A program made the translations under genes and the position numbers. Below the pieces are notes generated by a model, which was not told where the DNA came from, did not search any database, and saw nothing but the letters and a program-made list of their open reading frames with translations. DNA of 37,325 bases from Macrostomum lignano (taxonomy: Eukaryota). Below are positions 10,061-31,703 of this stretch, in pieces (positions within the stretch are counted from its first letter, which is position 1; each line of letters opens with the position of its first letter). Where the stretch lies: the NCBI GenBank assembly GCA_002269645.1, contig NIVC01004709.1:1-37325 (forward strand). The letters are read 5' to 3'.

Positions 10061-10201
10061 GTGAGACTGTCTTAAGTCAAACTCTTTGCTTATTTGTTTA
10101 AATTGTTTAGGTGAAGTGGCAGAATCATCGGCAAATTCGCTGGGTGGCTAAAAATATCCAAGATGTATTAAACAAGAATTGTACAAACCTACAACTTTCA
10201 G

Positions 10202-10908
10202 ACCGTTGGTTTCGGCTGAAAATGTTTGCTAACGACGAAGGCTCCTGGATGACAATGTGGTTCTCAACCATCATATCCGTGTACATTTTCTCCAACATTT
10301 ACAACGCTTTCCTGCTGACCCTCGGCGGCACGTCCAACATCCCCTATCTCATCAGTATGCAGATGGGCATCAAGAACTCCACGTTCATGAAGATGGCAGC
10401 CACAGGCACCTGGCTTGGCGACTTCATGACCGCCTGGATGGTGAGCGACATGATGCTACAGGAGCGTCTTTATCCAAGCTGGAACCGCTTCATCCGGCAG
10501 TGGTGGCGCTCTGGCTACACTCGGATCGTCATGTTCTGGCTGCTGCTAATCAGCTTGTGCACCACCGTTATCACAGTGATCTGCACCGACATCATCCGCT
10601 GGGACTACCTCAACAGGGGCTTTGCTCCGTCAAACGAACTGTCGCGGGCTTTCTTAGCTGCATCAATTCTGAGCCTTGACCTGCTGATTGTCATGCAGGA
10701 TTGGGACTTTCCTAACTTCACTAACAGCCTTGACGTTCGGCTGCCCGGCGTAGCCAAAGCTATCTACGCGTTCGATATCCGCATACCGGACTGGTTTAAA
10801 CGGATTGTCGACGACGACGTTTGGACGGTGCACATCACCGGGAAATGGTTCAACTATGGAGTACTGTTCGTAGTTATGTGTCTGGATTTGAACATGTGGA
10901 AGAATCAG
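10202..10908 (+). CDS. TMEM117: TMEM117 homolog, exon 2
   Basis: Acceptor tttcag|AC, donor CAG|gttagt. Contains RLKMF..D.GSWMTM, MKMAATGTWLGDFMTAWMVSDMMLQ, LNRGF.PS.ELSRAFLAS, DLLIVMQDWDFP and HITGKWFNYG..DLNMWKNQ, all TMEM117 signatures. Confidence 0.95.
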
Positions 10909-10992
10909 GTTAGTCAGGTTTTGGGGTTTAGAAGAAGAATTAGATTAAGGGGTTGGAAATGCGTAGCCGAAATCTCCACTTTCTACATGCAC

Positions 10993-13900
10993 AAGCTTGA
11001 CAAGCCCTATACTTCACAAACACCAAGCTTGACAAGCCCTAAACTTCACAAACACCAAGCTTGACAAGCCCTATACTTCACAAACACCAAGCTTGACAAG
11101 CCCTAAACTTCACAAACACCAAGCTTGACAAGCCCTATACTTCACAAACACCAAGCTTGACAAGCCCTATACTTCACAAACACCAAGCTTGACAAGCCCT
11201 AAACTTCACAAACACCAAGCTTGACAAGCCCTAAACTTCACAAACACCAAGCTTGACAAGCCCTAAACTTCACAAACACCAAGCTTGACAAGCCCTATAC
11301 TTCACAAACACCAAGCTTGACAAGCCCTAAACTTCACAAACACCAAGCTTGACAAGCCCTAAACTTCACAAACACCAAGCTTGACAAGCCCTATACTTCA
11401 CAAACACCAAGCTTGACAAGCCCTATACTTCACAAACACCAAGCTTGACAAGCCCTAAACTTCACAAACACCAAGCTTGACAAGCCCTATACTTCACAAA
11501 CACCAAGCTTGACAAGCCCTAAACTTCACAAACACCAAGCTTGACAAGCCCTAAACTTCACAAACACCAAGCTTGACAAGCCCTATACTTCACAAACACC
11601 AAGCTTGACAAGCCCTAAACTTCACAAACACCAAGCTTGACAAGCCCTATACTTCACAAACACCAAGCTTGACAAGCCCTAAACTTCACAAACACCAAGC
11701 TTGACAAGCCCTAAACTTCACAAACACCAAGCTTGACAAGCCCTAAACTTCACAAACACCAAGCTTGACAAGCCCTAAACTTCACAAACACCAAGCTTGA
11801 CAAGCCCTAAACTTCACAAACACCAAGCTTGACAAGCCCTAAACTTCACAAACACCAAGCTTGACAAGCCCTAAACTTCACAAACACCAAGCTTGACAAG
11901 CCCTAAACTTCACAAACACCAAGCTTGACAAGCCCTAAACTTCACAAACACCAAGCTTGACAAGCCCTAAACTTCACAAACACCAAGCTTGACAAGCCCT
12001 ATACTTCACAAACACCAAGCTTGACAAGCCCTAAACTTCACAAACACCAAGCTTGACAAGCCCTAAACTTCACAAACACCAAGCTTGACAAGCCCTATAC
12101 TTCACAAACACCAAGCTTGACAAGCCCTATACTTCACAAACACCAAGCTTGACAAGCCCTAAACTTCACAAACACCAAGCTTGACAAGCCCTATACTTCA
12201 CAAACACCAAGCTTGACAAGCCCTATACTTCACAAACACCAAGCTTGACAAGCCCTAAACTTCACAAAAACCAAGCTTGACAAGCCCTATACTTCACAAA
12301 CACCAAGCTTGACAAGCCCTAAACTTCACAAACACCAAGCTTGACAAGCCCTAAACTTCACAAACACCAAGCTTGACAAGCCCTATACTTCACAAACACC
12401 AAGCTTGACAAGCCCTAAACTTCACAAACACCAAGCTTGACAAGCCCTAAACTTCACAAACACCAAGCTTGACAAGCCCTAAACTTCACAAACACCAAGC
12501 TTGACAAGCCCTAAACTTCACAAACACCAAGCTTGACAAGCCCTAAACTTCACAAACACCAAGCTTGACAAGCCCTAAACTTCACAAACACCAAGCTTGA
12601 CAAGCCCTAAACTTCACAAACACCAAGCTTGACAAGCCCTAAACTTCACAAACACCAAGCTTGACAAGCCCTATACTTCACAAACACCAAGCTTGACAAG
12701 CCCTAAACTTCACAAACACCAAGCTTGACAAGCCCTAAACTTCACAAACACCAAGCTTGACAAGCCCTATACTTCACAAACACCAAGCTTGACAAGCCCT
12801 AAACTTCACAAACACCAAGCTTGACAAGCCCTAAACTTCACAAACACCAAGCTTGACAAGCCCTATACTTCACAAACACCAAGCTTGACAAGCCCTATAC
12901 TTCACAAACACCAAGCTTGACAAGCCCTAAACTTCACAAACACCAAGCTTGACAAGCCCTATACTTCACAAACACCAAGCTTGACAAGCCCTATACTTCA
13001 CAAACACCAAGCTTGACAAGCCCTAAACTTCACAAAACCAAGCTTGACAAGCCCTATACTTCACAAACACCAAGCTTGACAAGCCCTAAACTTCACAAAC
13101 ACCAAGCTTGACAAGCCCTAAACTTCACAAACACCAAGCTTGACAAGCCCTATACTTCACAAACACCAAGCTTGACAAGCCCTAAACTTCACAAACACCA
13201 AGCTTGACAAGCCCTAAACTTCACAAACACCAAGCTTGACAAGCCCTAAACTTCACAAACACCAAGCTTGACAAGCCCTAAACTTCACAAACACCAAGCT
13301 TGACAAGCCCTAAACTTCACAAACACCAAGCTTGACAAGCCCTAAACTTCACAAACACCAAGCTTGACAAGCCCTAAACTTCACAAACACCAAGCTTGAC
13401 AAGCCCTAAACTTCACAAACACCAAGCTTGACAAGCCCTAAACTTCACAAACACCAAGCTTGACAAGCCCTAAACTTCACAAACACCAAGCTTGACAAGC
13501 CCTATACTTCACAAACACCAAGCTTGACAAGCCCTAAACTTCACAAACACCAAGCTTGACAAGCCCTAAACTTCACAAACACCAAGCTTGACAAGCCCTA
13601 TACTTCACAAACACCAAGCTTGACAAGCCCTATACTTCACAAACACCAAGCTTGACAAGCCCTAAACTTCACAAACACCAAGCTTGACAAGCCCTATACT
13701 TCACAAACACCAAGCTTGACAAGCCCTATACTTCACAAACACCAAGCTTGACAAGCCCTAAACTTCACAAAACCAAGCTTGACAAGCCCTATACTTCACA
13801 AACACCAAGCTTGACAAGCCCTAAACTTCACAAACACCAAGCTTGACAAGCCCTAAACTTCACAAACACCAAGCTTGACAAGCCCTATACTTCACAAACA

Positions 13901-14236
13901 CCAAGCTTGACAAGCCCTATACTTCACAAACACCAAGCTTGACAAGCCCTAAACTTCACAAAACCAAGCTTGACAAGCCCTAAACTTCACAAACACCAAG
14001 CTTGACAAGCCCTAAACTTCACAAACACCAAGCTTGACAAGCCCTAAACTTCACAAACACCAAGCTTGACAAGCCCTATACTTCACAAACACCAAGCTTG
14101 ACAAGCCCTATACTTCACAAACACCAAGCTTGACAAGCCCTAAACTTCACAAAACCAAGCTTGACAAGCCCTATACTTCACAAACACCAAGCTTGACAAG
14201 CCCTAAACTTCACAAACACCAAGCTTGACAAGCCCC
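10993..14236. repeat. 32-bp satellite (caagcttgacaagcccta[a/t]acttcacaaacac), ~100 units, filling the TMEM117 last intron
   Basis: Period 32, one HindIII site per unit, two A/T variants. Confidence 0.99.
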
Positions 14237-14325
14237 AAAGCTTTTGCCAGCAAGCTATTTTTAATTTTTGCAAGCATGCTCTTCTTTACTCTGCTAATCA
14301 TACCAATACTCAACCCGTTTATCAG

Positions 14326-15027
14326 ATGATCTACTCGCCCTGCGAATACGGCCAATACGTCGGACCTTACGGCTCCATCTACACCGTGCACAACGAGACC
14401 GAACTCGCACTAGTAGATTGCAGCAGCGACAATCACACGCTTAACTATGAGTACAGAAATCAAACTTTTGCGCCAGACGGCGAGACCCTTCTGTCTAAGG
14501 ACATCTGGACCCATTCGCGCTACACCGGCTACCCGCTGTACGTGAAGCTCAGCTCGTTCCTGCTCAGCCTTACCGCTTTCGCCGTATTCGGAGCTTTAGT
14601 TGTGATATTCGGCCGCTATAGTGAAGAGCACAGAGACGTCTACCAGGGCCGGATGAAGAAAAATCGCACACTGAACAATCTGCTGGTTAGACACAGCGTG
14701 CACAGTCTCGACAACATTGTCGAAGTTGAGGGCGAAGCCAACGCAGCAGCAGCAGCAGATGCGGTCGCAGCTTTTAAGCCGTCAACGCCGCTGAAGTCAA
14801 CTGTGTCAGACCCCGGCGTGCAGCGATTGAAGCGGCTCAAGAAGATGAAACTGTCAGATCGGCAACATCAGCGTCAGGAGCATCGCCAGAAGCTGATGAA
14901 ACGGGCAGCTCAATACTGCTCTTGCTGCGTCTGCTCGTCTCGTTGCTGCTGCTGCGAGTCGAGGCCCACCGATGGGGCGGCATCGGGCCAAGGCCCAGCT
15001 GCTGGCGGCCAGACAATGGACGTGTGA
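14326..15027 (+). CDS. TMEM117: TMEM117 homolog, last exon
   Basis: Acceptor tttatcag|ATG in phase 0. KNQ|MIYSPCEYGQYVGP..IYTV matches TMEM117 KNQIFYKPHEYGQYIGP..IYTV. Followed by the last TM helix, a Cys-rich tail and stop TGA. Confidence 0.92.
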   Translation: MIYSPCEYGQYVGPYGSIYTVHNETELALVDCSSDNHTLNYEYRNQTFAPDGETLLSKDIWTHSRYTGYPLYVKLSSFLLSLTAFAVFGALVVIFGRYSEEHRDVYQGRMKKNRTLNNLLVRHSVHSLDNIVEVEGEANAAAAADAVAAFKPSTPLKSTVSDPGVQRLKRLKKMKLSDRQHQRQEHRQKLMKRAAQYCSCCVCSSRCCCCESRPTDGAASGQGPAAGGQTMDV

Positions 15028-17469
15028 TCCATCAATTCTGCTAGATATTTTTCTTCAAAATGTTCAAACTACTCAATCACTGGCCTATACAGGAAGTTGT
15101 CAATGTCTCCATTGAACGATCCGGGTGAGGGATAGCCGCGCTTCCAGAGCAGGGGGTTTTGGGTGGTATGACCGTTGCTATCGTTATTGTTGTTATGATT
15201 GTTTGAATTTTTGTGTCAGTTGCCTTCTAATAAATTCAACTAAGATCTCAAAGAGACTATACTTCTTAATTCTGTCGTCATAATCGCCTCGTCTTTTTCT
15301 CGCCATTTATCATTTTCTCTCTTTCACAGTGCAGCTTAAGATAAATACTCATTTAATCTGTCTTGCCTTAGTTCGATCGGTGTATCAAGTTTTTTAGTAT
15401 TGATACTCCGTATTAGTACGTATTAGTTTACGGACAAAGCACTAGGCTATATTCTATTCTAGACAGAATATCTTGTTGTCTACGTCTTCCTATATTATAA
15501 AGTTTTGGTAAAAAATTGTTCTTATAAAATTACATAGCTTTCACTATTTTCACCCTGTATGTATTTGCTACTTTCAGTAGGCAAGTCAAGTGTGTAGTAT
15601 TTTGGCGCAATTCAATATTACCTCGTCATTTACTGTATTATTTTGTTTTATTATGCAAGCAGACTGGTCCATTGTATGAGAAGTTTCTGTTTTCAGTTTT
15701 AATCAAAAGCTGAACTAGTATTGACTTCTAAAAACGATTTTGTGCGATCTCGCACTGTTGTAATTACAATTTTATTATCTTACTTTTACCTGCTTCGTCG
15801 CGAATTAACTCAAGAAAACTCTTCGCTGTCAAGTAGTGCATTGTGCTTTTGTCTTTGATAAATTCAAATCAATTATGCTTATTGCTTGCTCATTAAAGTA
15901 AAATATGCCATGTCCTCGTATCATTTACTTCACTGTTTTTGGGGCACTCAATACTTTAAGTTTTTTCAGGATTGTCTTGCTCGTTATTTGCTTTTTTACA
16001 AAGTATTTAATTGCTACCGTGGCTTGAACAGTCAAAAGACCATGCTTATACTACTGCTTGCTAAGTAGTCGTGACTTTGGATAGCTTATTGCACCTTAGG
16101 AAAATCAGTGACTCAAATTTTACTCATGGTTAACACAGTTGTTTTAATTACCATTGTGGTCTTTCGACTGTATTACTTCTTAGTTTTACATGTACTTTTT
16201 CCTTTATTTAAGATTTAAATTTTGTTAAAGAAACCCGCCGATCAGCAACTCATTCCGTTGTTGTGACGCCATAGTGTCTTAACTATATAAATGTATCATT
16301 CTTAAACAGTAAATGGAGAACTTAGCAAAGACCTACTGCAGGTCTTAAATGGATGAACAACACTGCTGGTTGCATGCTTGTCAGTTGGTTGGCGAGTTCG
16401 TTAACTATATAAACATTAGTACCATACTTCATGTACAAGAAGTGCATGTACTATTGACGCTGATTGTTTTAATACTCGTATTTACTCGTATTTCGCGCTA
16501 ATTGCAGCAACTTTTTTGTTGTTTTTCTCTGGTAAATCCAGACTCAAAAATACGCACCGTAATCGCTATGTATGACGTCCGCTATCTTATCAGTGCAAAA
16601 CAGCTCGCTGTTTACAACGCTAACAATCAGTACAGCTCGGTTTAAAAAGCTGAAAAATTGTCTCAATAAAAATATAAAGTGCATTGTTGTCGAACGTTTT
16701 TTATAACCAGTCTGTGTCAAGCAAAATAAACTCGAAAAAATCTTTAGTCTGAATTGTTTTTTGTTTCCTTAGTGAATAATCCCCTTTTTACTTTCTGGCT
16801 TGCATTGGAACAATTGGAACAATTGGAACAATAATTGGAACAATTTTATAACGCTGTCATTCGATCCGTTAAATATTACATGGTACGATGCGTATGTGTT
16901 GAAGGTATTACAAATTCATTTACTCATTGCCGCGCGTCTCGTAAAGTCGTAATCTAGCCTTATACGAGCGTACGCTTGTAAAACTGTGTGAAGGGAAAAA
17001 GAGATCCGTGCGTTCGTTCAGTGTGTACGAGTCGCGACGAGTGTACATTTGATCCAATGTACACTAGAAATTTAAATTAGAACCAATGTACATTGATTTG
17101 CGGAGAGAAAGGGGCGGCCGGTTTGCTTATCTGAAAACGGGTCGCAGGTCCTAGTAGAAGTGGCGGGGCTGGCACTGGAGCGGGAGGAGGGCTTGTGTTC
17201 GAGGCCTTGAAGCCTGACGCTAAAATTTGTGTGCAGAAATACAGACACACCAACCAGAGCTGGTGCAGGGAGTTGGGGACGAGAAGACCAAGCTCTGTGC
17301 GCACCGCGCACAAGCTTAATAATTAGAATACAGAGCGGACCTCCTCACGCCACCACCTCAAATCTCGGCCCCCCTTGTATGTTTTTATCTTTTCGCTTTC
17401 TCTAATTATTTTTTACCCGGCTAAAAAGCACAGTTATTTGCTAATTTGATTGAAAAAACTGTTGCAGTA

Positions 17470-17826
17470 ATGTCCAACAGAGAATTTAAAATTGTCCTCT
17501 TGGGCGAGGGCTGTGTCGGCAAAACTTCTTTGGCGCTGCGCTACGTCGAGGATAAGTTCAATGACAAACACTTAACCACAGTGCAGGCCTCGTTCCTTTC
17601 TAAGAAACTTAACGTCTCCGGCCGACGGGTGACGCTGAACATCTGGGACACGGCCGGGCAGGAGCGCTTTCACGCCCTCGGTCCAATCTACTATCGGGAT
17701 AGTGACGGCGCTATTCTAGTTTACGACATCACTGACGAGGATTCGTTCGAGAAGGCGCGCAACTGGGTCAAGGAGCTGCGCAAGATTCGCGGCAACGATG
17801 TCACACTGTACCTAGTTGGCAATAAG
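17470..17826 (+). CDS. RAB21: Rab21 small GTPase, exon 1
   Basis: FKIVLLGEGCVGKTSL.LRY.E.KFNDKH.TT.QASFL.KKLN, IWDTAGQERFHALGPIYYRDS.GAILVYDITDEDSF are Rab21-diagnostic. Donor AATAAG|gtgcga. Confidence 0.95.
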
Positions 17827-17940
17827 GTGCGAACACTGCGGGGAGGGCATATTATCCCCACGATAGATAATTTGTACCGGTCTTTGTTTGGTAGCAGTTT
17901 GCAGTTCGTATTGCTATTTGGTAAAACTGTCTCCCTACAG

Positions 17941-18261
17941 ATTGACCTCGAACGCGATCGTCATGTACCGCTAGCGAATGCCGAGGAATTCGCCAGCTCG
18001 GTCGGCGCCAAGCACTGCGGCACATCCGCTAAGCTGAACCGCGGCGTAGAAGAGGCGTTCGCTCGCCTGACAGCCGACATGCTGGCTCGTCGCGACGCCG
18101 AGGAGGCGTCCAACCCAGGCTCCTCGTCTAGGTCGTCCACGTCAAGGTCTGAGGGCGCAACGTCAGCTGGTCGACGTTCCTCTGGCCGAAACGCCGGCAT
18201 CATTGTTGGCGAGGATGACGTAGACGGAGCTTCAGGCGCCGGCGGTGGCAAATGCTGCTAG
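17941..18261 (+). CDS. RAB21: Rab21 small GTPase, exon 2
   Basis: Acceptor ccctacag|ATT restores GNK|IDLE (G4). TSAK (G5) and C-terminal CC prenylation motif present. Confidence 0.93.
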   Translation: MDLERDRHVPLANAEEFASSVGAKHCGTSAKLNRGVEEAFARLTADMLARRDAEEASNPGSSSRSSTSRSEGATSAGRRSSGRNAGIIVGEDDVDGASGAGGGKCC

Positions 18262-19205
18262 CATGCAAAGCGGCCAACAAGGGCAAGATTCCACCCTAAG
18301 ATCTAGTTGCATGGCTGTCGGCACTTTTCTATAACCTTTCCAACTTTTTTCCATTTTTTCTTTACCGTGATTGATTGTAGGATTTTCCAAGCTTGCTATT
18401 TATAGATATGCTACGAGCGTATCTATTCAGAATTTTAGAAGCCATATATAATGCATGATCATGATGGAACTAGTCTTTCGTGTATTTTGTCTGATCATCA
18501 TTACGGCTCTGCTTAATGGAGACGCATGGAAGCATGGAAGCAGTAGAGCTTGCCCAGCTCTTGTGGTTCCTCTTTGATGTGCTTGTGCAATGCTGTTTGA
18601 AATCCATTTTGTCTAATATTCGTACAGCGAAAGTTCAGCAGCATGATATGTGTAGACTGGATGTTGTGTTGCACTTCATTTGCTTTTGCCCCTGTCTAGC
18701 GTACCTGTAACCCTGCAAGTGTACTAAAAGCATAGTGTACTAAGAGCTAACTTCGCTGCCATCTGTCTAATGCGACTTTAAACTTCGACGGTCCTTGTTT
18801 GTGGCTGATTCTACGAGGTTTTACAACTTATCTCTTGCTTTTACCCTTATATGCCCATAGTTGCATTAGTGTATCATTGTTCGTTTACTGCCTCCTCATT
18901 GACCCAACCAATGAGCAGATATTAACGGATCTGTATGCTAATCTTATTGAGTAAACTTATAGTTATACACTAATGTAAAAATAGAAAGTGTTTGAAAGCT
19001 ATAGCAAAATCAACGGAGTAGATTATTCCGTTCAGCCGATTATTTTAAACCGTCTATTTTAAAGTTCGATTTTGCTACTGTTCTAGTTCTCAATCAAGAT
19101 AAAGCATTTACCACCACCAAGTTATGTCCTGTCAATAGCAAAATTTCTCAACCTCATTGATTGAGTGAGTGCATCAGCTGTCAATTCTTGATTTCAGCTT
19201 TAACC

Positions 19206-21092
19206 TCACCGGCCTCCCCTGCCGCTACGCTTTCTCCAGCTGCCTCTAAGCTTTCTCCAGCCGCCTCTACGCTTTTGCCAGCCACCTCTACGCTTTCTCC
19301 AGCCGCCTCTACGCTTTTGCCAGCCGCCTCTACGCTTTCTCCAGCCGCCTCTACGCTTTTGCCAGCCGCCTCTACGCTTTTGCCAGCCGCCTCTACGCTT
19401 TTGCCAGCCGCCTCTACGCTTTCTCCAGCCGCCTCTACGCTTTCTCCAGCCGCCTCTACGCTTTTGCCAGTCGCCTCTGTCACTGTCATCATCAACCCAA
19501 CTTCTGTCGTATCCTCTTCTTTTACCCCTGTTCTTATCATCTCTGTCCTTGCCTGCTTTGCCCTTACTTCCCTTGCCTTTGTCTCCTTTACCCTTGCCTC
19601 CTTTGTCCTTGTCATCTTCGTCATTATCATCGCCATGACTGTGACCGTGTCCATGACCATGACCATGTCCATGACCATGACCGTGTCCATGACCGTGACC
19701 GTTTCCATGACCGTGACCATGACCGTGTCCATGGCAATGTCCATGACCATGTCCACGACAATGTCCTGGACGCTTTGTTGTCGTCGCTTCAGTAGTAGTT
19801 GTGGGAGCTTCGGTTGTAGTTGTCGTAGCTTTGGTTGTAGTTGTTGGAGCTTTGGTTGTAGTTGTTGGAGCTTTGGTTGTAGTTGTCGGAGCTTCGGTTT
19901 TAGTTGTCGGAGCTTCGGTTGTAGTTGTTGGAGCTTTGGTTGTAGTTGTTGGAGCTTCGATTGTAGTTGTTGGAGCTTCGGTTGTAGTTGTCGGAGCTTC
20001 GGTTGTAGTTGTCGGAGCTTCGGTTGTAGTTGTCAGGGCTTTTGTTGTAGTTGTTGGAGCTTCGGTTGTAGTTTTTGGAGCTTTGGTTGTAGTTGTCGGA
20101 GCTTTGGTTGTAGTTGTCGAAGCTTCGGTTGTAGTTGTTGGAGCTTCGGTTGTAGTTGTTGGAGCTTTGGTTGTAGTTGTCGGAGCTTCGGTTGTAGTTG
20201 TTGGAGCTTCGGTTGTAGTTGTCGGAGCTTCGGTTGTAGTTGTCAGGGCTTTGGTTGTAGTTGTTGGAGCTTTGGTTGTAGTTGTCGGAGCTTCGGTTGT
20301 AGTTGTTGGAGCTTTGGTTGTAGTTGTCGGAGCTTCGGTTGTAGTTGTTGGAGCTTTGGTTGTAGTTGTCGGAGCTTCGGTTGTAGTTGTCAGGGCTTTG
20401 GTTGTAGTTGTTGGAGCTTTGGTTGTAGTTGTCGGAGCTTCGGTTGTAGTTGTTGGAGCTTTGGTTGTAGTTGTCGGAGCTTCGGTTGTAGTTGTTGGAG
20501 CTTCGGTTGTAGTTGTTGGAGCTTTGGTTGTAGTTGTCGGAGCTTTGGTTGTAGTTGTTGGAGCTTGGGTTGTAGTTGTTGGAGCTTCGGTTGTAGTTGT
20601 CGGAGCTTTGGTTGTAGTTGTTGGAGCTTCGGTTGTAGTTGTTGGAGCTTTGGTTGTAGTTGTTGGAGCTTCGGTCGTAGTTATCGCAGCTTGGGTCGTA
20701 GTTATCGCAGCTTGGGTCGTAGTTGTCGCAGCTTGGGTCGTAGTTGTCAGAGCTTGGGTCGTAGTTGTTGGAGATTCGGTAGTTGTCGGAGCTTCGGTTG
20801 TAGTTTCTGCTGCTTGTGCTGCCTTCTCTATCGCTGCTGCAGCTGGGCAGCCGTTACTTGCGGATCTCTGAATGTTGCTGACGTAGTTGGTTTTTCCAGC
20901 ATCGTTGCCGCACATGCTGCTGGTTGGCGAGGCCTTGCAGAATTCGTCGTACCTCTCGTTGCTAAACTGCACTACGCAGTTGATGCAGGCGTCCCGGTCC
21001 TTGGCAAAGCACTCGGCTAAGTTGATTGCAGCGCCAACCGCAAGCGACAGTGTCGCCAGAACAGCGGCGCTCAGAGCTAGGCTGTAGCGCAT
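19206..21092 (-). CDS. Secreted modular mucin-like protein (signal peptide, 6-Cys domain, TTTT[E/K]AP repeats, (HG)n, acidic/GK linker, (W[Q/R]KRRGG)n tail), 628 aa
   Basis: Single ORF from ATG with a hydrophobic signal peptide. Third-position synonymous variation in the HG and Thr repeats supports this frame. TATA box upstream. Confidence 0.85.
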   Translation of the reverse strand: MRYSLALSAAVLATLSLAVGAAINLAECFAKDRDACINCVVQFSNERYDEFCKASPTSSMCGNDAGKTNYVSNIQRSASNGCPAAAAIEKAAQAAETTTEAPTTTESPTTTTQALTTTTQAATTTTQAAITTTQAAITTTEAPTTTTKAPTTTTEAPTTTTKAPTTTTEAPTTTTQAPTTTTKAPTTTTKAPTTTTEAPTTTTEAPTTTTKAPTTTTEAPTTTTKAPTTTTKALTTTTEAPTTTTKAPTTTTEAPTTTTKAPTTTTEAPTTTTKAPTTTTKALTTTTEAPTTTTEAPTTTTEAPTTTTKAPTTTTEAPTTTTEASTTTTKAPTTTTKAPKTTTEAPTTTTKALTTTTEAPTTTTEAPTTTTEAPTTTIEAPTTTTKAPTTTTEAPTTKTEAPTTTTKAPTTTTKAPTTTTKATTTTTEAPTTTTEATTTKRPGHCRGHGHGHCHGHGHGHGHGNGHGHGHGHGHGHGHGHGHGHSHGDDNDEDDKDKGGKGKGDKGKGSKGKAGKDRDDKNRGKRRGYDRSWVDDDSDRGDWQKRRGGWRKRRGGWRKRRGGWQKRRGGWQKRRGGWQKRRGGWRKRRGGWQKRRGGWRKRRGGWQKRRGGWRKLRGSWRKRSGRGGR

Positions 21093-21172
21093 GCTTTAGT
21101 TGTCTGAATATGGTAACCAGTTTGTTGCTACAACAGTCAGCTAGGGAGATATTCGACTAAAATATCGATTAA

Positions 21173-21178
21173 TTTATA
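21173..21178 (-). promoter_or_regulatory. TATA box of the mucin-like gene
   Basis: Minus strand CCTATAAATT ~80 bp upstream of ATG 21092. Confidence 0.55.
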
Positions 21179-22014
21179 GGTTTTCTGACGGTCCAGCTAC
21201 TTTGACGCAAATACTTTGCTGCCCAAGCACTGCGCTTTCAAAGGATTATTTCCACTAATCGCATCCGCATTAACACTTCTTAAGTGCCAGTTGTCGACGG
21301 GCATTTACACAAAGCTGGGCAGCCTTTCCCAGGCAACTTCAGGGACAGGCGCGAATGCGCCAGGTGTGCGGATGATCCGATTTCAAATGAAATTATTCTC
21401 AAAATTTGAGTTTTCTGTCAAAATGATCGAATTTTTGGGAACTCTGGAATAAACTTGAGTTTCGGTGAAATTTCATGCCCAAAGTAGTCCTAGACTGCGG
21501 CAAGACTTTCCGTATTTGTTCTGGTATAAAGGTATTATTCATATTTCATATTCTTTCCGTTCATTGGATTAGCGAATAGAAGAATTAGTCTTACAGCTGT
21601 GTTGGATTTACTTAAATATTTGCAGTTGGCTAACCAAAATTGTGGTTGCATCCATCAACTAAACGGATATACAGGCTTAGGAAAGTTACCCACTCGTACG
21701 CATGTACTCGTATTAGCTAGTCTCTTCTGCTTGTAAACACCACCGGGACGAAAAAGCAAACGCAGAAAAAATGCAAAGCTGATGCGCTGTTTTTACGGTT
21801 AAATTTGTTCAATCAAGTAGCAGGTTTTTGATAAATTATTCATTATTCATCTCGAGTGTCTATGGTACTTGCGTCTTCTGGGAAAGGCAGATAGGGAAAT
21901 TTATATGCGCGAACTAAGGCATGAACAAATTTTTGGTTAACTATAAGGCATTTGGTCAACTCGCTCTCGCTACTTGAGAGACGGCAGGAAGATTTGGTAA
22001 CGCCAGCAGCAGAG

Positions 22015-22992
22015 ATGCCGAGCAAGCGGCCGCTCAGGCGGATGCTGTTCCGCCAGCGAAGTCGCGGCGCTTCGCTCGCCACCGTCAGTCCAGACGATTG
22101 GTCACCGCTGCATCCGCCGGAGCCGCCGATGCAGCAGCAGACACGGCCCCTGTCGATGTCGCCTGATGCTGGCCTGCATCAGCAGAAGTACCAACAGCAG
22201 CAGAAGCAGCAGGAGAAGAAGCTTCAGTACCATGATTTAAGCTGGAACAATACGGAGATCGACCATGACAGTTCCGAAGGACCAGCTGGTTTTTCAGGCG
22301 GCGAGGGTAGCCAGTGCAGCGAGGATCAAGTTGAACGATTGGCAAAGTGCCAGAAGTCGCTTGATAAGCTGGAGTTCTCCCTGAACAACATGATGCTGGG
22401 GCTCAGCTTGGCTCCGAGGAACCAGCGGCGATTAGCCGAAGCCGACAGGTTCCTGACCGATCTGGTGGACAGCATCCGGGCCAACCGGACCAGCCGGCGC
22501 CCGCGGAGGCGGCCAGATCAAGCAAAGACATCAGCTCAGCAGGCGAATGCGCTGCAGACGCCGATGCGGCGCAAGCTGGAAAACGAGAGTCGCGCCCTGT
22601 GGCGGGCGCAGCACATCGGTGCACGCTGTGAAGACACAGTGGACCGTTACATGCTGGATGTGGTCATGGACCGGCTCGGCGAGATGGCCGCGGTGGACAA
22701 TGGCAGAGACAGAGGGCGGCAGGGAAAGCAGAAAAAACAGCCGGGCGGTCGAGGTCGACAACCTAATCGACGGCAGCAGTCGGGCACCTGCGGCAGGTGC
22801 GGCGGTATCGTTACGTCCATTAAGAAGAGTAGCGAGGGCGAGGGCGAGCTCTCCGGCGAAGGCTACGACGAAAACGCCGATAATGATTACAGTGGCAACC
22901 GACACAACAGCTGCAGCATGCTGAGCTTCGGCGCCAGCGGAGCTAGCGGTGGCATCAGCTTCCCAAAACGACTGCCAAACAGCCTGGGGTGA
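22015..22992 (+). CDS. Hypothetical protein (~325 aa, Q-rich and helical segments), no family recognised
   Basis: Long GC-rich open frame flanked by AT-rich DNA; first ATG at 22015. A GTGAGT at 22989 may mean the 3' end is spliced. Confidence 0.6.
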   Translation: MPSKRPLRRMLFRQRSRGASLATVSPDDWSPLHPPEPPMQQQTRPLSMSPDAGLHQQKYQQQQKQQEKKLQYHDLSWNNTEIDHDSSEGPAGFSGGEGSQCSEDQVERLAKCQKSLDKLEFSLNNMMLGLSLAPRNQRRLAEADRFLTDLVDSIRANRTSRRPRRRPDQAKTSAQQANALQTPMRRKLENESRALWRAQHIGARCEDTVDRYMLDVVMDRLGEMAAVDNGRDRGRQGKQKKQPGGRGRQPNRRQQSGTCGRCGGIVTSIKKSSEGEGELSGEGYDENADNDYSGNRHNSCSMLSFGASGASGGISFPKRLPNSLG

Positions 22993-23288: not shown

Positions 23289-24269
23289 ATGGAAGCTTCG
23301 CAGGACCAGTGGACGCTGCGCACCTGGCAGCCGACAGCCGCCCAGTCTAGCGGCACTAACAACAACAACTGCTGCCAGCGAACTGTACCGGCGGCTGTCC
23401 CAGCCGCAGACCCGGACGCAACGCTGCAAACTCCAGCGCCCAACAATACCAGCAGCGACAGTCGTCGGGTTACCACCCTGGCGGCTAGCGTTGCGGCCTA
23501 CCGTCGCGGCTCTCTCCGATACGCCAAAGCGTTGCGTGTGGCAGCTTACTTGCGCGATCTCTGCCGCGAGTTTTATCGGACTGGCTGCGGAGGCCGCGCG
23601 CCGCCGGTTGCCCACGACCTCGAGTGGGTGCTGAGCAGCCTGACGGAGCTGGTTACTATGCGCGACCGGGCTGTGGCGCTGGCTGTGCGCTGCACTGGCT
23701 GTCCCGCGCTGTGTCCAGCCGAGCGCCTGTCCAGCCCGCAGCTTTGCCGGCTGCGCCGTCTCTTGAAACTTGCCTGCACAAAAGGCGACTGCAAAAGCGG
23801 CAGCGGAGGCCTCCTCGACCTCGTTGATGCTCTGGCCGACTCTGACAATAGACCTGACCGATGCCGGCTGCTGCGTCAGCTCCGAGAAGTTGCCGCCTAC
23901 TCGGACGGACCAGACGCCAACTATCGGCGCCTCATCAATGCCATGGCCGGTCAGACTGAGCTGGCCAACTGCGCGTCAAATTACGCGGCACATCAGCGTC
24001 GGATGTGCGGCACAGCGCCGCCTGTGGTGCCGGGGCCGCGCGGTCTCACTCGAGCAGACATGCGCGCCCTGGCTATCGATCTGGCGCCGATAGAAGCGGC
24101 TGCATCGGCGCCTTGCCAGCAACGGCGACGTCGGCGACGACCCCTTCGGCGCAGTGCTGCTGCAGCGTCACCGCTAACGAAGGCGCTGCACAACCCGGCG
24201 GAGATGCGACGCCGCCTCCGGATGCACCAGTTTGCCACTGGCGCTTCGCTGGCTGTCAAGGCCGAGTGA
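23289..24269 (+). CDS. Hypothetical protein (326 aa, Cys-containing helical), no family recognised
   Basis: Long GC-rich open frame with AT-rich flanks. Start uncertain: ATG 23200 in another frame could be joined by a -1 shift. Confidence 0.6.
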   Translation: MEASQDQWTLRTWQPTAAQSSGTNNNNCCQRTVPAAVPAADPDATLQTPAPNNTSSDSRRVTTLAASVAAYRRGSLRYAKALRVAAYLRDLCREFYRTGCGGRAPPVAHDLEWVLSSLTELVTMRDRAVALAVRCTGCPALCPAERLSSPQLCRLRRLLKLACTKGDCKSGSGGLLDLVDALADSDNRPDRCRLLRQLREVAAYSDGPDANYRRLINAMAGQTELANCASNYAAHQRRMCGTAPPVVPGPRGLTRADMRALAIDLAPIEAAASAPCQQRRRRRRPLRRSAAAASPLTKALHNPAEMRRRLRMHQFATGASLAVKAE

Positions 24270-24572
24270 GTTACAATGCGACCCAGTTTGGCAAGAGGAG
24301 GCAAGAAGCCTGAAGTTTTCCTTAGAACAATCTCCAATTAGTATGATTTTCAAAAAATTAGTGAGGCAAAATGCGGAGCATTAGAGAGACATCATGCCAG
24401 CAAAGTAGAGGGGATCAATCAATTAAATCATCAGAAATTGAGACTGAGGGGTCCATTGCAGGGGCGTAGCCAGGTTTTATAATTGAGGGCCGGGTCTTGC
24501 GCCAGTACCAAGAGCCGCCACCTCTCAAAAGTATCATGGCAGGCGCGCCATCTAGGGGGCGCCATCTTGGGA

Positions 24573-25138
24573 GCACCAAGGGGCTTTAGCACCAAGGGGC
24601 TTTAGCACCAAGGGGCGCCAGCACCAAGGGGCTTTAGCACCAAGGGGCTTTAGCACCAAGGGGCTTTAGCACCAAGGGGCTTTAGCACCAAGGGGCTTTA
24701 GCACCAAGGGGCTTTAGCACCAAGGGGCTTTAGCACCAAGGGGCTTTAGCACCAAGGGGCTTTAGCACCAAGGGGCTTTAGCACCAAGGGGCTTTAGCAC
24801 CAAGGGGCTTTAGCACCAAGGGGCTTTAGCACCAAGGGGCTTTAGCACCAAGGGGCTTTAGCACCAAGGGGCTTTAGCACCAAGGGGCTTTAGCACCAAG
24901 GGGCTTTAGCACCAAGGGGCGCCAGCACCAAGGGGCGCCAGCACCAAGGGGCGCCAGCACCAAGGGGCGCCAGCACCAAGGGGCGCCAGCACCAAGGGGC
25001 GCCAGCACCAAGGGGCGCCAGCACCAAGGGGCGCCAGCACCAAGGGGCGCCAGCACCAAGGGGCGCCAGCACCAAGGGGCGCCAGCACCAAGGGGCGCCA
25101 GCACCAAGGGGCGCCAGCACCAAGGGGCGCCAGCACCA
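24573..25138. repeat. 16-bp minisatellite in two variant blocks (gcaccaaggggcttta then gcaccaaggggcgcca)
   Basis: Period 16, ~35 units, abrupt switch near 24920. Confidence 0.97.
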
Positions 25139-26023
25139 AATTAGTTGCTGGGGATAGGTGAAATGATTAACAGGGGGCGCCTAATCAGCGAGCAAGGCTC
25201 CCCCTGCCCTCCTCCCTGGTCTATTGGGGTTTGGTGCCTGTTTTCTCGCGTGAGCAGACTACCGATGTGTGCAATATAAATAATTATCGAAGTGGATATT
25301 TAAAAAAACAGTTAATCCCGACGCATTTCAGAGAAGGCTTCCCAAACTCGTGAACTGACTTCTCGTCTCGCTGACTTCATCAATTTTCTAAGCAACGACA
25401 GCCTACCAGACTCCGGCGGATGGGAGACACCCAGCCGAAGCTTCACTCCCTAAAGCAGCATATTTTTGTGAAATCAGCTCAAAAACATTTCCAGACAGTC
25501 TTTAGTCCTCAACCAGTTTAGTCTCTGTGCCTCGACTGATTAATTTTTACATACCCGCAACTTAACCCTGCCCATGCACCTGCCAATGACAAGGCAGGGT
25601 CATTGTTGACAAAAGCAGCTAAGACAAGGATGCAGCAAAACTACTGTGCGAAAATCAATAAACCCTAAAAAATAAAGGACTACTTATTAAAATTCTGTTT
25701 CACCAACACTGCTCGGACGTGTTTTGGTTTCCAGTTCATTCGTAACAGCTCTGCTACTTCCAAGAGTTTAGAGTCCACAGTGAATTCAGCTATAGAATTG
25801 ATAGTAGTTGTTTAAAAGCATAAGCACGTTTATTTTTATGCATTTCATATATGTAGGCGTACTGTATGATAGAAAATAAACACAGTGCATAGAGCAAGCA
25901 ATTTGTTCCCCAAATTCAGATTTCTTTATCCAAAATACTCAACAGCGGTCGGATCAGTACTGGAACGGCATATAATTTCGAATTTCTGTTGACTAAAATT
26001 ATTATCGATTTAAAATAAAATCA

Positions 26024-27654
26024 TCATCGATTTCCCGAGGGCGCCGCGGTCTCGGCCGCCGCCTCCGCCTCCTCCTGCAGCTCCTGCAGCCGGCGCTTCT
26101 CCTCCTTCTCCCTGATCTTGCGGTTTCTCTCCTCGGCCTCGGGTGTGATCAGATTGTGCCAGCGGGCCACCGCCCGGTTCGGCGTCTGCAGCAGCTCGCG
26201 CCAGTGCAGCAGCGGCAGACTGTCAGGGTCGGCGCCTGCGTGCAGCTCCAGAGAGCCGACGGGCCGCTTGAGCCGCAGGGTCTCGGTCTTGTGCACCAGA
26301 GTGATGCGCAGGATGCACGTCTCCAGCATGTCGCGAGCGCCAACTTCGAACACGAACTGCTGGTTGAAGTAGGGATTCCTGGTGCCCGAGACCTGCTTGG
26401 ATCGTTTCACCTGTTCGCGTTTCAGCTGCGGATGCCGCAGGCTCAGGCGCACAAAGGTGTTTGGTAGGGTCTCGAGGTCCGGCTCCTCGGAGCGACCCTT
26501 GGCGACGAAGACGCCCTTGCATTCGATGATGCTCACGGTGAGCGACATGTTCTTGGCGGCGTAGTACAGCGACAGGCAGATGTCGCCTGGCCCGCGTTCG
26601 TCGCGTGGCAAGCCGCGGCGCAGCGCCTTCGAGAAGTCGGCTGTCCGCCCGAGAATCTCGTCCAGACCTTCGCCCAGGCGACGTAGGTGGACAACTTTGC
26701 GTGCCACCATGTCGTGCTTGATTCCGTAGTCCCAATCGAATACCTCGAACACGACAATCTTCTCCTTGAGCTCTGACTTCTTCTTTACTGGGAAGACGCA
26801 GGAGAAGTTGAATACCGGGTTCCCGCTGTTGCGCACAGTTTTCGACGTTTTTGGCTTTGTGCCGCGCGTCTTGCCAGCAGCCTCGTCCTTCTCGCTCATC
26901 ATGCTCACCACCACGTACGGGTCTAAGCTGTCCAGGCCTTTTGGCAGATCCTGACAGTTGGACACGGTCACTATGAGGTTGTCCTTCTTTAGATCGTACT
27001 CCAGCGAGTAGTTGATCATGCCGAACTGGGGCCGGTTTGCGCCGGTCAGGTCCAGGTCTTGTACAGCACTGACTGGGCGGGCGGCTGCATCCGGCTTCGG
27101 CTGGACTTGCTGCGGCAACAGCAGCAGTAGATGAGCAGCGCTAGCAGCAGCAGAAAAATGAGACCGATACCGGAAAATATTAAAATAATGGCCCACAGAG
27201 GCAATATTTTGCGCAGCTTCTGCCACAGAGTAGCGAAAAAGTTTTTCTGCTTCTTTTTCTTCTTTTTCTTCTTGTGCTTCTTGTCCTCTTTAGAGACAGC
27301 TTTGCCCAGCTTTGAGGCTCCGCTGACAACGTCAGAAAGATGCGCACCCTTCTTCTCGATCTGGCTGACCGCTTTACGACGCTGTAGCTCCTTGTGCAGC
27401 ACGGTTTTTAGCTGCCGTAGCAGCTCCTTGTGGTCGCCACCCTCGGGAGGCGGTGCCAACTCTTCTTTTGATCGTCTCTCTAGGCCAATCTCGCTGTCTT
27501 CGTCGTCCAGGTCTGGAACCTCTTCCAGCTGAATGGAGTCGGCACCGGCGGCGGGGATGGCGGTGGCCACAGCGGCTACTGGCGGCGGCGACGGCAGCAG
27601 CAGCGGCAGCAGAAGCAACAGCAGCGGAAGCAGCGGCCCTGCCCGCCGCCGCAT
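26024..27654 (-). CDS. Intronless synaptotagmin-like protein (signal-like N-terminus, luminal domain, TM, CCCC, C2A, C2B) with an apparent -1 frameshift at ~27076
   Basis: C2A: FGMINYSLEYD..L.VTV..C.DLP....DPYV...NPVFN..FEVFDWD...HD. C2B: GDICLSLYY....LTVSIIEC...NPYFNQQFVF...ARWH.L. The TM plus Cys cluster lies in the upstream frame; one extra C in gcccagtc joins the two frames. Confidence 0.85.
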
Positions 27655-30353: not shown

Positions 30354-30590
30354 TTAAAAACCGCTGCTCACATCCTCGTGTCCGGGCAGCTGCAGCTGAT
30401 CCTGCATCAGGCGCATCCGTTTCGTTCTTCGGCATTCGGCGCTGCAACGTCGAGCCTCCGGCGCCTTCGCAGCGCCGATAGCGCCGCGCCGGCAAAGCCA
30501 GGCGCCCAGACGGGTAGCCAGAAGAGTCTCGCGCAGCTCCCGGTGCACCTCAGCATTCACGAAGCAGTAGAGCAGGGCTACCAGGAAGCC
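30354..30590 (-). CDS. Class B (secretin-family, PTH-receptor-like) GPCR, TM7/helix 8 exon
   Basis: Acceptor aacccag|GGC; GFLVALLYCFVNAEVHREL. Either ends at stop 30354 or uses the donor GAT|gtgagc at 30372 to an unidentified last exon. Confidence 0.85.
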   Translation of the reverse strand, partial: GFLVALLYCFVNAEVHRELRETLLATRLGAWLCRRGAIGAAKAPEARRCSAECRRTKRMRLMQDQLQLPGHEDVSSGF

Positions 30591-30687
30591 CTGGGTTGTT
30601 AAGAATGGATTATCAAGATTTCTAAGAATTATTTGCTTTCCTTAATGCTATTCAGCTTCACTGAATAGGTTTCGATTCAGTAGCTAC

Positions 30688-30838
30688 CTGAAATGAGCTG
30701 AAAAAGTGCTCGTAGTAGAGTCGGACAAACTCCAGTTTCGCTCCGAGACGGTCTTTCGGGATCATAGCCACGGGTAGGAAGATCAGGTAGTAGATCCCGA
30801 ATACCAGCACAAGCACTGATGTGGACTTCCACAACTTT
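30688..30838 (-). CDS. Class B GPCR, TM6-ECL3-TM7 exon
   Basis: ttgcag|A ... CAG|gtagct; (R)KLWKSTSVLVLVFGIYYLIFL...YYEHFFSSFQ. Confidence 0.9.
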
Positions 30839-30879
30839 CTGCAATCGATGGAATGGTATTGTCTTCTGTATGCTCCCAA

Positions 30880-31625: not shown

Positions 31626-31703
31626 CTTCAACACTTTACTCAGAGTTTCTTTTAATCCTTAATTAAAAGTGCATTAGTAGAAGCTCGAGAGCGAGGCACG
31701 AAC

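What the first reader, a model, noticed from the sequence alone, without database searches (positions are those of the whole stretch)
19206..21092. Secreted block-copolymer protein: mucin stalk + His-Gly metal-binding block + acidic block + cationic Trp tail
Seen, in order: signal peptide; ~55-aa 6-Cys domain; ~48 TTTT[E/K]AP heptads; ~45-aa (HG)n with two Cys; DDNDEDDKD and GK-rich linker; ten W[Q/R]KRRGG heptads plus two degenerate ones at the C-terminus. Known: Thr-rich repeats are O-glycosylated. His/Gly-rich blocks bind Zn/Cu in polychaete jaw and mussel byssus proteins. Arg/Lys/Trp-rich sequences drive cation-pi coacervation and membrane lysis. K/R-rich repeats occur in flatworm adhesive protein ap1. 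Each heptad has a KRR convertase-type site. Inference: an undescribed mucus, adhesive, cocoon or antimicrobial structural protein, possibly releasing or tethering cationic peptides.
Basis: partly seen in the sequence, partly recalled or inferred. Interest (0 to 1): 0.7.

Follow-up and report, generated by a model that had tools for sequence, protein, structure and literature searches.

The report
Orphan secreted mucin with cationic tail
An animal genome window holds a single-exon gene for a secreted, threonine-rich mucin-like protein followed by a histidine-glycine block and a highly positive tryptophan-arginine tail; it has no detectable relatives, so its role as a mucus, adhesive or coat protein is only inferred from its sequence.

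Summary
ORF 19206-21092 (minus strand, 628 aa) encodes, in one frame:
- a signal peptide
- a 74-aa six-Cys head
- about 49 TTTT[E/K/Q]AP heptads
- a 48-aa (HG)n block with 20 His and 2 Cys
- acidic and Gly-Lys linkers
- ten W[Q/R]KRRGG heptads plus two degenerate ones (net charge about +41)

It looks like a real gene. Only this frame is stop-free and codon-usage positive across the unique 5' part. An in-frame stop sits just upstream of the ATG, and a TATAAA lies 86 nt upstream. All four internal arrays have periods divisible by 3, unlike most minisatellites in this window.

It is an orphan. No Pfam family matched. No homologue of the head or the tail was found in 5.8 billion and 1.84 billion proteins, in metagenomes or in PDB sequences. 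The head's predicted helical fold has no PDB match.

The window is from a bilaterian animal, with neurophysin, TMEM117, Rab21-like, synaptotagmin-like and class-B GPCR genes. The species cannot be named.

Function is inferred only. My best reading is a mucin brush docked to polyanions by its tail, with His/Gly as a metal or pH switch. Five furin-type sites could instead remove the tail.

Interest is moderate to low until expression is shown.

The parts
21173..21178 (-). TATAAA box, 86 nt upstream of the ATG (candidate core promoter)
   Evidence: a sequence motif only, no transcript data
19206..21092 (-). Complete single-exon coding sequence, 628 codons plus TGA stop. An in-frame TAA lies two codons upstream of the ATG.
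21030..21092 (-). Signal-peptide-like N-terminus, aa 1-21 (MRYSLALSAAVLATLSLAVGA)
   Evidence: only 2 of 57 ATG-ORFs of at least 60 aa in the window have such an N-terminus
20808..21029 (-). Unique six-Cys head, aa 22-95, predicted as a small helical bundle
   Evidence: AF2 single-sequence model, pLDDT 83, pTM 0.65, four helices; no fold match in PDB; no sequence relatives; GC3 0.65, close to the 0.70-0.82 of neighbouring exons
19776..20807 (-). Mucin-type stalk, aa 96-439: 49 heptads TTTT[E/K/Q]AP (21-bp array, 89% matches)
19632..19775 (-). His-Gly block, aa 440-487, with 20 His and 2 Cys
19470..19631 (-). Mixed-charge linker, aa 488-541: DDNDEDDKD, a GK-rich stretch (net +10) ending in the furin-type site RGKRR, then YDRSWVDDDSDRGD with an RGD
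19209..19469 (-). Polycationic Trp tail, aa 542-628: ten W[Q/R]KRRGG heptads, WRKLRGS, WRKRSGR and GGR. Net charge about +41. Four RKRR furin-type sites.
19022..19044 (-). Two AATAAT variants, 161 and 178 nt after the stop. These are the only poly(A)-signal-like motifs; there is no canonical AATAAA.

Best explanation
This is a real, single-exon, lineage-restricted gene of a bilaterian animal. It encodes a secreted modular protein that is mostly disordered.

After signal-peptide removal, a small disulfide-bonded helical head sits on a 344-residue Thr/Pro stalk. If the stalk is O-glycosylated like other PTS domains, it forms an extended hydrated bottle-brush.

The C-terminal 190 residues form a charge-patterned module:
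- An (HG)n block, whose 20 imidazoles titrate near pH 6-6.5 and can chelate Zn or Cu.
- Two short acidic patches around a Gly-Lys linker.
- An 87-residue tail with about 41 net positive charges and a Trp every seventh residue.

The mechanism I think most likely is as follows. The tail docks the mucin non-covalently onto polyanions, such as sulfated or acidic glycans of mucus or glycocalyx, and possibly microbial surfaces. Binding would be electrostatic plus cation-pi/Trp contacts. The His-Gly block would add pH- or metal-dependent cross-links. Together these give a cohesive, hydrated secreted layer such as mucus, glue or coat. Furin-type sites may let the cell tune or cut this anchorage.

Shown here: the sequence anatomy, the coding signals and the lack of relatives. 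Inferred: secretion, glycosylation, metal binding, polyanion binding and processing.

Rough sub-confidences:
- Real protein-coding gene: 0.8.
- Secreted mucin-type glycoprotein, given that: 0.7.
- The specific anchoring and cross-linking mechanism: 0.3.
For: - One frame is open from an ATG, preceded by an in-frame stop, through four different arrays and two unique segments.
- The unique 5' part is stop-free and codon-usage positive only in that frame. Shuffles keep it open 2.6% of the time.
- The N-terminus looks like a signal peptide, a feature seen in only 2 of 57 ATG-ORFs in the window.
- The head gives a confident helical model even without an alignment (pLDDT 83).
- All arrays inside the ORF have periods divisible by 3, whereas most arrays outside do not.
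- Variation among heptads is lowest at codon position 2 (9, versus 30 and 35 at positions 1 and 3).
- A TATAAA lies 86 nt upstream.
- The gene sits between ordinary animal genes in a convergent/divergent arrangement with room for UTRs.
- Block charges are: tail +41, GK linker +10, acidic patch -6, and 20 His in the HG block.

Analogies from papers:
- Mlig-ap1, the KR-rich cohesive protein of a flatworm glue, is inhibited by heparin. Its authors propose that a small anion is the natural releasing factor (PMC6410801).
- The Gly/His-rich jaw protein Nvjp-1 binds Zn in a pH-dependent way (PMC9465683).
- The C-terminal heparin-binding domain of SOD3 decides matrix retention and is removable by furin (PMC12774472, abstract).
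Against: - There is no transcript, protein or orthologue evidence of any kind.
- No homologue was found, so conservation cannot support coding.
- GC3 in the Thr and HG arrays is 0.21-0.24, against 0.70-0.82 in neighbouring exons. The whole-ORF codon score is negative.
- The window is full of non-coding minisatellites that also give long ORFs. The opposite strand carries a 619-aa open frame over the same span.
- There is no canonical AATAAA downstream.
- Five R-x-[K/R]-R sites and ten KRR sites could remove or shred the tail in the secretory pathway, which would undo the anchoring model.
- All functional claims rest on composition, not homology.
Confidence: 0.45

Rival explanations
1. Proprotein reading. 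The protein is cut by furin/PC-type convertases at RGKRR (aa 522-526) and at the (R/Q)KRR sites of each heptad. The mature mucin then lacks the tail. The tail would act as a removable packaging or condensing pro-region in the granule, or as a source of about ten very short cationic Trp peptides: GGW[Q/R]KRR, or GGW[Q/R] after carboxypeptidase trimming. Such peptides could have antimicrobial or signalling activity.
For: Five full R-x-[K/R]-R sites and eleven KRR triplets, regularly spaced. Furin removal of a basic C-terminal matrix-binding tail is documented for SOD3 (PMC12774472). Multi-copy peptide precursors are usually built this way (general knowledge).
Against: The released units would be only 4-7 residues with one Trp each. 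That is shorter than typical Trp/Arg antimicrobial peptides (my knowledge). No Gly follows the Trp, so there would be no amidation signal as in Wamide or APGWamide-type precursors (sequence). A 344-residue mucin stalk is not a feature of neuropeptide precursors. No family match.
Confidence: 0.2
2. Not a functional gene. The ORF would be a cluster of adjacent minisatellites that happens to stay open next to a short unique stretch, or a decaying or very young gene that makes no stable product.
For: The window is unusually rich in minisatellites (33 TRF rows). Several give long spurious ORFs, for example 33261-34271 and 30853-31662. Repeat units are 89-91% identical, meaning young, homogenised arrays. 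GC3 of the arrays is unlike that of neighbouring genes. No relatives anywhere. The antisense strand is open too.
Against: Four different arrays plus two unique segments all keep one frame. That frame starts with an ATG and a signal peptide directly after an in-frame stop. Only that frame of the unique part is open and codon-usage positive. The head folds confidently in silico. The array periods are all multiples of 3, unlike most others in the window. A TATA box is suitably placed. The + strand ORF has no ATG before its middle and no recognisable start features.
Confidence: 0.15
3. Hard-material reading. The His-Gly block is the business end, and the protein is a matrix component of a metal-hardened or cross-linked structure such as a jaw, stylet, hook, eggshell or cocoon. 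The Cys residues and metal-His bonds would cure the material, while the mucin and the tail serve delivery or interface functions.
For: The 48-aa block has 20 His alternating with Gly, plus 2 Cys. Gly/His-rich proteins harden Nereis jaws through Zn (PMC9465683). Another Gly/His-rich protein, spinalin, is located in the spines of Hydra nematocysts (PMC2687796).
Against: The HG block is under 8% of the protein. Known hard-tissue proteins are Gly/His-rich over most of their length and also rich in Tyr or Asp. Here 55% of the protein is a hydrophilic mucin stalk, which suits a hydrated rather than a sclerotised material. There is no sequence relationship.
Confidence: 0.1

Closest known systems
Secreted mucin-type (PTS-domain) glycoproteins
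   Same: Signal peptide followed by a long tandem array rich in Thr and Pro (56% Thr, one Pro per 7 residues), flanked by a Cys-containing unique domain.
   Different: No VWD, C8, TIL, CysD, CK, SEA or transmembrane domains (no Pfam hit at all). The head is an unrelated small helical six-Cys domain. A His-Gly block and a polycationic Trp tail are not, to my knowledge, parts of described mucins.
Mlig-ap1, the cohesive protein of the Macrostomum lignano temporary adhesive (PMC6410801)
   Same: Secreted and lineage-restricted, with extremely basic Lys/Arg repeat regions. Heparin impairs its cohesive function and a small anion is proposed as the natural releasing factor. That is the same physical principle I propose for the tail.
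   Different: Mlig-ap1 is very large. Its KR regions total more than 3,600 aa and are combined with conventional domains, such as 17 calcium-binding EGF-like modules. Here the basic tail is 87 aa with Trp every 7 residues, and no known domain is present. No sequence comparison with Mlig-ap1 could be run, and the source species is unknown.
Gly/His-rich structural proteins (Nereis jaw protein Nvjp-1; Hydra spinalin)
   Same: Alternating or dense Gly and His, neighbouring acidic residues, and expected pH-dependent Zn/Cu coordination.
   Different: In those proteins the Gly/His composition dominates the chain. Here it is one 48-aa block in a 628-aa mucin. No homology. No Tyr-rich context.
Basic C-terminal matrix-retention tails removed by furin (e.g. 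extracellular superoxide dismutase SOD3)
   Same: A C-terminal cluster of Arg/Lys that binds heparan sulfate and contains a furin site, so that cleavage decides between matrix-bound and free forms (PMC12774472).
   Different: Those tails are single short clusters on a folded enzyme or growth factor. Here the motif is repeated 12 times with Trp and hangs on a mucin.
Trp/Arg-rich antimicrobial peptides and multi-copy peptide precursors
   Same: Trp plus Arg/Lys composition, and repeated units bounded by di- or tribasic sites.
   Different: The units are only 7 residues with one Trp. There are no amidation Gly, spacer or pro-regions, and the precursor carries a mucin stalk.

Membership tests
Mucin-type secreted glycoprotein (PTS-domain protein) | N-terminal signal peptide | tested here: met
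   Charged n-region, a 16-residue hydrophobic core and small residues at -3/-1 (VGA|A). Heuristic only, no dedicated predictor was available.
Mucin-type secreted glycoprotein (PTS-domain protein) | Long tandem-repeat domain dominated by Thr/Ser/Pro | tested here: met
   aa 96-439, 49 heptads, 193 Thr in 344 residues, Pro in most units.
Mucin-type secreted glycoprotein (PTS-domain protein) | Dense O-glycosylation of the repeat domain | not testable with these tools
   Needs glycoproteomics, lectin or PAS staining.
Gel-forming or membrane mucins (MUC2/MUC5 or MUC1 type) | VWD/C8/TIL/CK domains, or SEA plus a transmembrane domain | tested here: not met
   No Pfam family at E<=0.01 for the whole protein. 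Nothing above cut-off at E<=10 for the head or the C-terminal part. The C-terminus is polybasic, not hydrophobic.
Gly/His-rich metal-binding structural proteins (Nvjp-1, spinalin type) | Gly and His dominate most of the mature chain | tested here: not met
   Gly/His richness is confined to 48 of 628 residues.
Gly/His-rich metal-binding structural proteins (Nvjp-1, spinalin type) | Zn/Cu binding that changes material properties | not testable with these tools
   Needs ITC or other metal assays on the HG block.
Flatworm adhesive protein Mlig-ap1 | Thousands of residues of KR repeats combined with EGF-like and other conventional domains | tested here: not met
   The tail is 87 aa and no Pfam domains are present. 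The architecture of Mlig-ap1 is taken from PMC6410801.
Flatworm adhesive protein Mlig-ap1 | Sequence homology and expression in adhesive gland cells | not tested
No hit of any kind was found with the tail. Expression is not testable here.
Multi-copy bioactive peptide precursor | Repeated peptide units bounded by di- or tribasic convertase sites | tested here: met
   Eleven KRR triplets at 7-residue spacing, five with R at P4.
Multi-copy bioactive peptide precursor | Units long enough to be active, often with a C-terminal Gly for amidation | tested here: not met
   Units would be GGW[Q/R](KRR), 4-7 residues, with no Gly before the basic site.
Heparin-binding basic retention tail | Cluster of basic residues at the C-terminus of a secreted protein | tested here: met
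   41 K+R and no D/E in the last 84 residues; computed tail pI about 12.
Heparin-binding basic retention tail | Measured binding to sulfated glycans | not testable with these tools
   Needs heparin chromatography or SPR.

The most novel reading that the evidence does not exclude
A previously unknown class of self-contained 'block-polyampholyte' mucin. One chain would combine a glycan brush, a His/Gly pH- or metal-operated switch, and a Trp-studded polycation. Together with the acidic patches or a co-secreted polyanion, the polycation would drive coacervation in the granule and switchable adhesion or cohesion after release. That would be a one-protein version of what flatworm, mussel and sandcastle-worm glues achieve with several proteins.
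Probability: 0.15. Interest if true: 0.65.

Novelty: new variant of a known kind. Interest (0 to 1): 0.35.

Why it matters
If the gene is expressed and the tail is kept, it would be a compact natural design. A brush, a metal/pH switch and a polycation would sit in one 64-kDa polypeptide (computed without glycans). That is of interest for reversible wet adhesion, mucus mechanics and biomimetic coacervates. Each block is short enough to test as a synthetic peptide. It would also be a clear example of a secreted gene assembled largely by minisatellite expansion in a genome that is very rich in such arrays. If the tail is cleaved, or the ORF is not expressed, it is one more lineage-specific low-complexity ORF of the kind common in invertebrate genomes.

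Tried and rejected
1. Homologues of the Cys head:
- The word-indexed search of 5.8 billion proteins found nothing at E<=10.
- Full phmmer over 1.84 billion representatives gave one hit at E=7.8e-4. It is an internally repetitive 189-aa protein matched over 32 residues, which I judged spurious.
- The metagenome scan gave no confirmed relative.
- PDB sequences gave only eS25 at E=0.66.
- Pfam gave only DUF6971 at E=0.018, 15.6 bits against a cut-off of 27.

2. Homologues of the acidic/GK/Trp tail: 5,089 word candidates, none at E<=1.

3. A degenerate DNA pattern for two WxKRRGG units in metagenomes gave four loci. In L001, L003 and L004 (L002 was not opened) the matches lie in short, array-confined ORFs of 43-141 aa within tandem repeats, and in L003 the array frame is interrupted by TAG stops. 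They are not relatives.

4. The exact protein is not on record in public assemblies.

5. A fold search of the head model against PDB gave a best E of 5.3 and TM of at most 0.39, so no match. I considered saposin-like, CHH-like, pheromone-like and odorant-binding-like six-Cys helical folds from memory. None was returned by the search.

6. Rfam on the whole window found nothing. The bacterial promoter/terminator scan is irrelevant for an animal gene; its 'terminators' are the repeat units themselves.

7. Naming the organism failed. The TMEM117 exon is only about 46-60% identical to the listed hits (vertebrates, molluscs, annelids, priapulids, cnidarians), with no near-identical entry.

8. Synonymous versus non-synonymous counts among heptads do not discriminate frames well (35:39 in frame, 28:44 and 29:39 in two other frames). 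Two dimorphic sites dominate the variation, so I gave this little weight.

9. No paralogue of either unique part exists in the window.

10. The + strand 619-aa ORF was rejected as the gene. It starts at TTG in the bacterial sense, has no ATG until its middle, has no signal peptide, and scores negative across the unique 5' segment.
Full report
**The observation**

Parsing the translation gives these blocks:

| Residues | Content |
|---|---|
| 1-21 | Signal-peptide-like start (MRY, hydrophobic core SLALSAAVLATLSLAV, then GA/A) |
| 22-95 | Unique head with Cys at 28, 36, 39, 52, 61, 82 |
| 96-439 | 49 heptads; 47 in strict register (17 TTTTEAP, 15 TTTTKAP, the rest single-residue variants); 193 Thr in 344 residues; roughly balanced E and K |
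| 440-487 | KRPGHCRGHGHGHCHG(HG)n...HSHG, with 20 His and 2 Cys |
| 488-496 | DDNDEDDKD |
| 497-527 | Gly-Lys linker, net +10, ending in RGKRRG |
| 528-541 | YDRSWVDDDSDRGD |
| 542-628 | Ten perfect W[Q/R]KRRGG heptads, then WRKLRGS, WRKRSGR and GGR |

The last 84 residues hold 41 K+R and no acidic residue.
- KRR occurs in the ten perfect heptads only.
- Four heptads plus the linker site carry the full furin consensus R-x-[K/R]-R.
- There is no N-glycosylation sequon in the protein.

**Is it a gene or an accident of minisatellites?**

This question matters because the window is packed with tandem arrays (33 TRF rows). Several of them generate long meaningless ORFs.

Evidence for a gene:
- The ATG at 21092 is preceded two codons upstream by an in-frame TAA, so the ORF starts at the first possible Met, and that Met opens a signal-peptide-like sequence. 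Only 2 of 57 ATG-ORFs of at least 60 aa in the window have such an N-terminus.
- Across the 285 unique bases that encode the signal peptide and head, the proposed frame is the only one of six without stops. It is also the only one with a positive log-odds codon score against neighbouring Pfam-supported exons (+11.1, versus -21 to -75). Its GC3 is 0.65, against 0.70-0.82 in those exons. Only 2.6% of shuffles of this segment stay open.
- The four arrays inside the ORF have periods of 21, 6/12/18, 15 and 21. All are divisible by 3 and all are joined in one frame. Only 8 of 20 array periods elsewhere in the window are divisible by 3.
- Among the Thr heptads, codon position 2 varies least (9 differences, versus 30 and 35).
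- A TATAAA lies 86 nt upstream of the ATG.
- The gene is convergent with the Rab21-like gene, leaving about 950 nt for two 3' UTRs.
- The head alone gives a confident AlphaFold model without any alignment (pLDDT 83, pTM 0.65, four helices). That is unusual for random sequence.

Evidence against:
- GC3 of the Thr and HG arrays is only 0.21-0.24, and the whole-ORF codon score is negative.
- There is no canonical AATAAA downstream, only two AATAAT motifs.
- The opposite strand is open over almost the same span.
- There is no expression or conservation evidence.

I put the probability that this is a real protein-coding gene at about 0.8.

**Relatives**

None were found.
- Pfam gave nothing for the whole protein and nothing above cut-off for the head or the C-terminal 189 residues, even at E<=10.
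- The head found no relative in the 5.8-billion-protein index. An exhaustive phmmer run over 1.84 billion cluster representatives gave one spurious hit to an internally repeated protein. There was nothing in metagenome contigs or PDB sequences.
- The predicted fold of the head matches nothing in PDB (best E 5.3).
- The acidic/GK/Trp tail had 5,089 word candidates but no scoring hit.
- A degenerate DNA pattern for two consecutive tail units hit four metagenome contigs. In the three I opened, the matches are short array-confined ORFs in tandem repeats, and one array is interrupted by stop codons.
- The exact protein is not on record, and the window holds no paralogue.

The gene is an orphan as far as these collections can see.

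**Context**

The window is animal DNA, and most probably bilaterian. It contains:
- a neurophysin-domain exon (PF00184, E=1.6e-11) at 589-918 (-)
- TMEM117 exons at 9601-10098, 10111-11064 and 14326-15027 (+)
- a Rab-family (Rab21-like) gene at 17446-18261 (+)
- a gene with a transmembrane segment and two C2 domains at 27753-26024 (-)
- class-B GPCR exons between 33197 and 30357 (-)

The TMEM117 exon is only about 46-60% identical to the listed hits, which span vertebrates, molluscs, annelids, priapulids and cnidarians. The species and its close relatives are therefore absent from the searched collections.

**How it most likely works**

What follows is inference from sequence and from named analogies.

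A signal peptide without any later hydrophobic segment implies secretion. A 344-residue array with 56% Thr and regular Pro is the defining make-up of mucin PTS domains, which are densely O-glycosylated and extended (established knowledge).

The C-terminal module is a charge-patterned polymer. Twenty His alternating with Gly would switch from cationic to neutral and metal-binding between granule pH and external pH. This is the behaviour described for the Gly/His-rich jaw protein Nvjp-1, where acidic residues pair with protonated His at low pH and Zn coordination rises at pH 8 (PMC9465683).

The tail is a dense polycation with one Trp per heptad. In the flatworm glue, the KR-rich cohesive protein Mlig-ap1 works by charge, is blocked by heparin, and is proposed to be released by a small anion (PMC6410801). 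In SOD3, a basic C-terminal heparin-binding domain decides matrix retention and can be removed by furin (PMC12774472).

I therefore favour a secreted mucin whose tail docks it to anionic glycans or surfaces. The His/Gly block, and perhaps its two Cys, would provide switchable cross-links, giving a cohesive hydrated layer.

The main rival is that the five furin-type and ten KRR sites cause the tail to be removed or shredded in the secretory pathway. The tail would then be a packaging pro-region or a source of very short cationic peptides. The units (4-7 residues, one Trp, no amidation Gly) look too small for typical antimicrobial or neuropeptide products, so I rate this lower, but it cannot be excluded.

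A hard-material role centred on the HG block is less likely, because that block is under 8% of a mostly hydrophilic chain.

**Comparison with known systems**

The protein works like a mucin and meets the sequence-level criteria for a PTS-domain protein. It lacks every domain that defines the gel-forming or membrane mucin families.

It resembles Mlig-ap1, Nvjp-1/spinalin and basic retention tails only in the composition of single blocks. It fails their architectural criteria, and homology is absent or untested.

The combination of helical six-Cys head, mucin stalk, HG block and Trp-polycation tail is, to my knowledge and in all searches here, undescribed. I file it as a new variant of a known kind: a lineage-specific, secreted, low-complexity structural glycoprotein.

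**Verdict**

- Interest is 0.35. The architecture is attractive for bioadhesion and materials science, but orphan repeat proteins are common in invertebrate genomes and nothing here shows expression or function.
- Transcript mapping and C-terminal proteomics are the decisive next steps.

Noticed in passing
window 589-918 (-): An open frame encodes a neurophysin domain (PF00184, E=1.6e-11; CxxxCGxGxGxC...CCG pattern). This is probably an exon of a vasopressin/oxytocin-type neuropeptide precursor, which argues that the source is a bilaterian animal.
   Followed up: partly
window 10992-14239: A 32-bp unit is repeated 101.6 times at 98% identity (3.2 kb, strong GC skew of -0.57). It lies between TMEM117 exons 10111-11064 and 14326-15027, so it is a very large, very young intronic minisatellite.
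   Followed up: partly
window 17446-18261 (+): A Rab-family GTPase gene (Ras PF00071, E=1e-51; Rab21-like by eye). It has a short intron of about 114 nt (GTAAGA...CAG) that stays open in frame, so the bacterial-style ORF reads straight through it.
   Followed up: partly
window 26024-27753 (-): A gene with an N-terminal transmembrane segment, a poly-Lys stretch and two C2 domains (PF00168, E=6e-28). It looks synaptotagmin-like.
   Followed up: no
window 30357-33197 (-): Exons of a class-B (secretin-type) GPCR: PF00002 at E=7e-12 for 32652-33197 and 8e-4 for 31655-31927, plus a TM7-like exon at 30357-30641. Introns are filled by 42-bp and 16-bp minisatellites.
   Followed up: partly
window 21952-22992 and 23289-24269 (+): Two GC-rich (0.58-0.61) open frames of 346 and 326 aa with no Pfam match lie divergent from the mucin gene. 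They are Gln/Arg-rich and of unknown function. They may share the 21093-21950 intergenic region as a bidirectional promoter.
   Followed up: no
window 33292-34286, 2416-3226, 24572-25139, 34809-35223, 35721-36158, 36655-37315, 1-145: Many further minisatellites, with units of 35, 20, 16, 10, 22, 21 and 4 bp and 20-42 copies each. Some create long spurious ORFs, for example a 336-aa ORF at 33261-34271. The genome seems exceptionally prone to tandem-array expansion.
   Followed up: no
window 19161-21020 (+): The strand opposite the mucin gene is open for 619 codons over the same span (SPAASTL, MTVTVS and CSCWSFG repeats). It has no ATG start before its middle. I judged it a by-product of the repeat composition.
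   Followed up: yes
window 19470-19478 (-), aa 539-541: An RGD tripeptide sits in the acidic patch just before the tail (DSDRGDW). About 0.13 occurrences are expected by chance from the composition, so it is not significant on its own, but it is a possible integrin-type motif.
   Followed up: partly
window 19776-20807 (-): The fifth codon of the heptad is G/A/C-AA (23 Glu, 19 Lys, 5 Gln among the 47 units in register), which keeps the stalk nearly charge-neutral. The five Gln units all lie in the first ten positions of that register. Thr codons are spread over ACA, ACT and ACC, unlike the ACC preference of neighbouring genes.
   Followed up: partly
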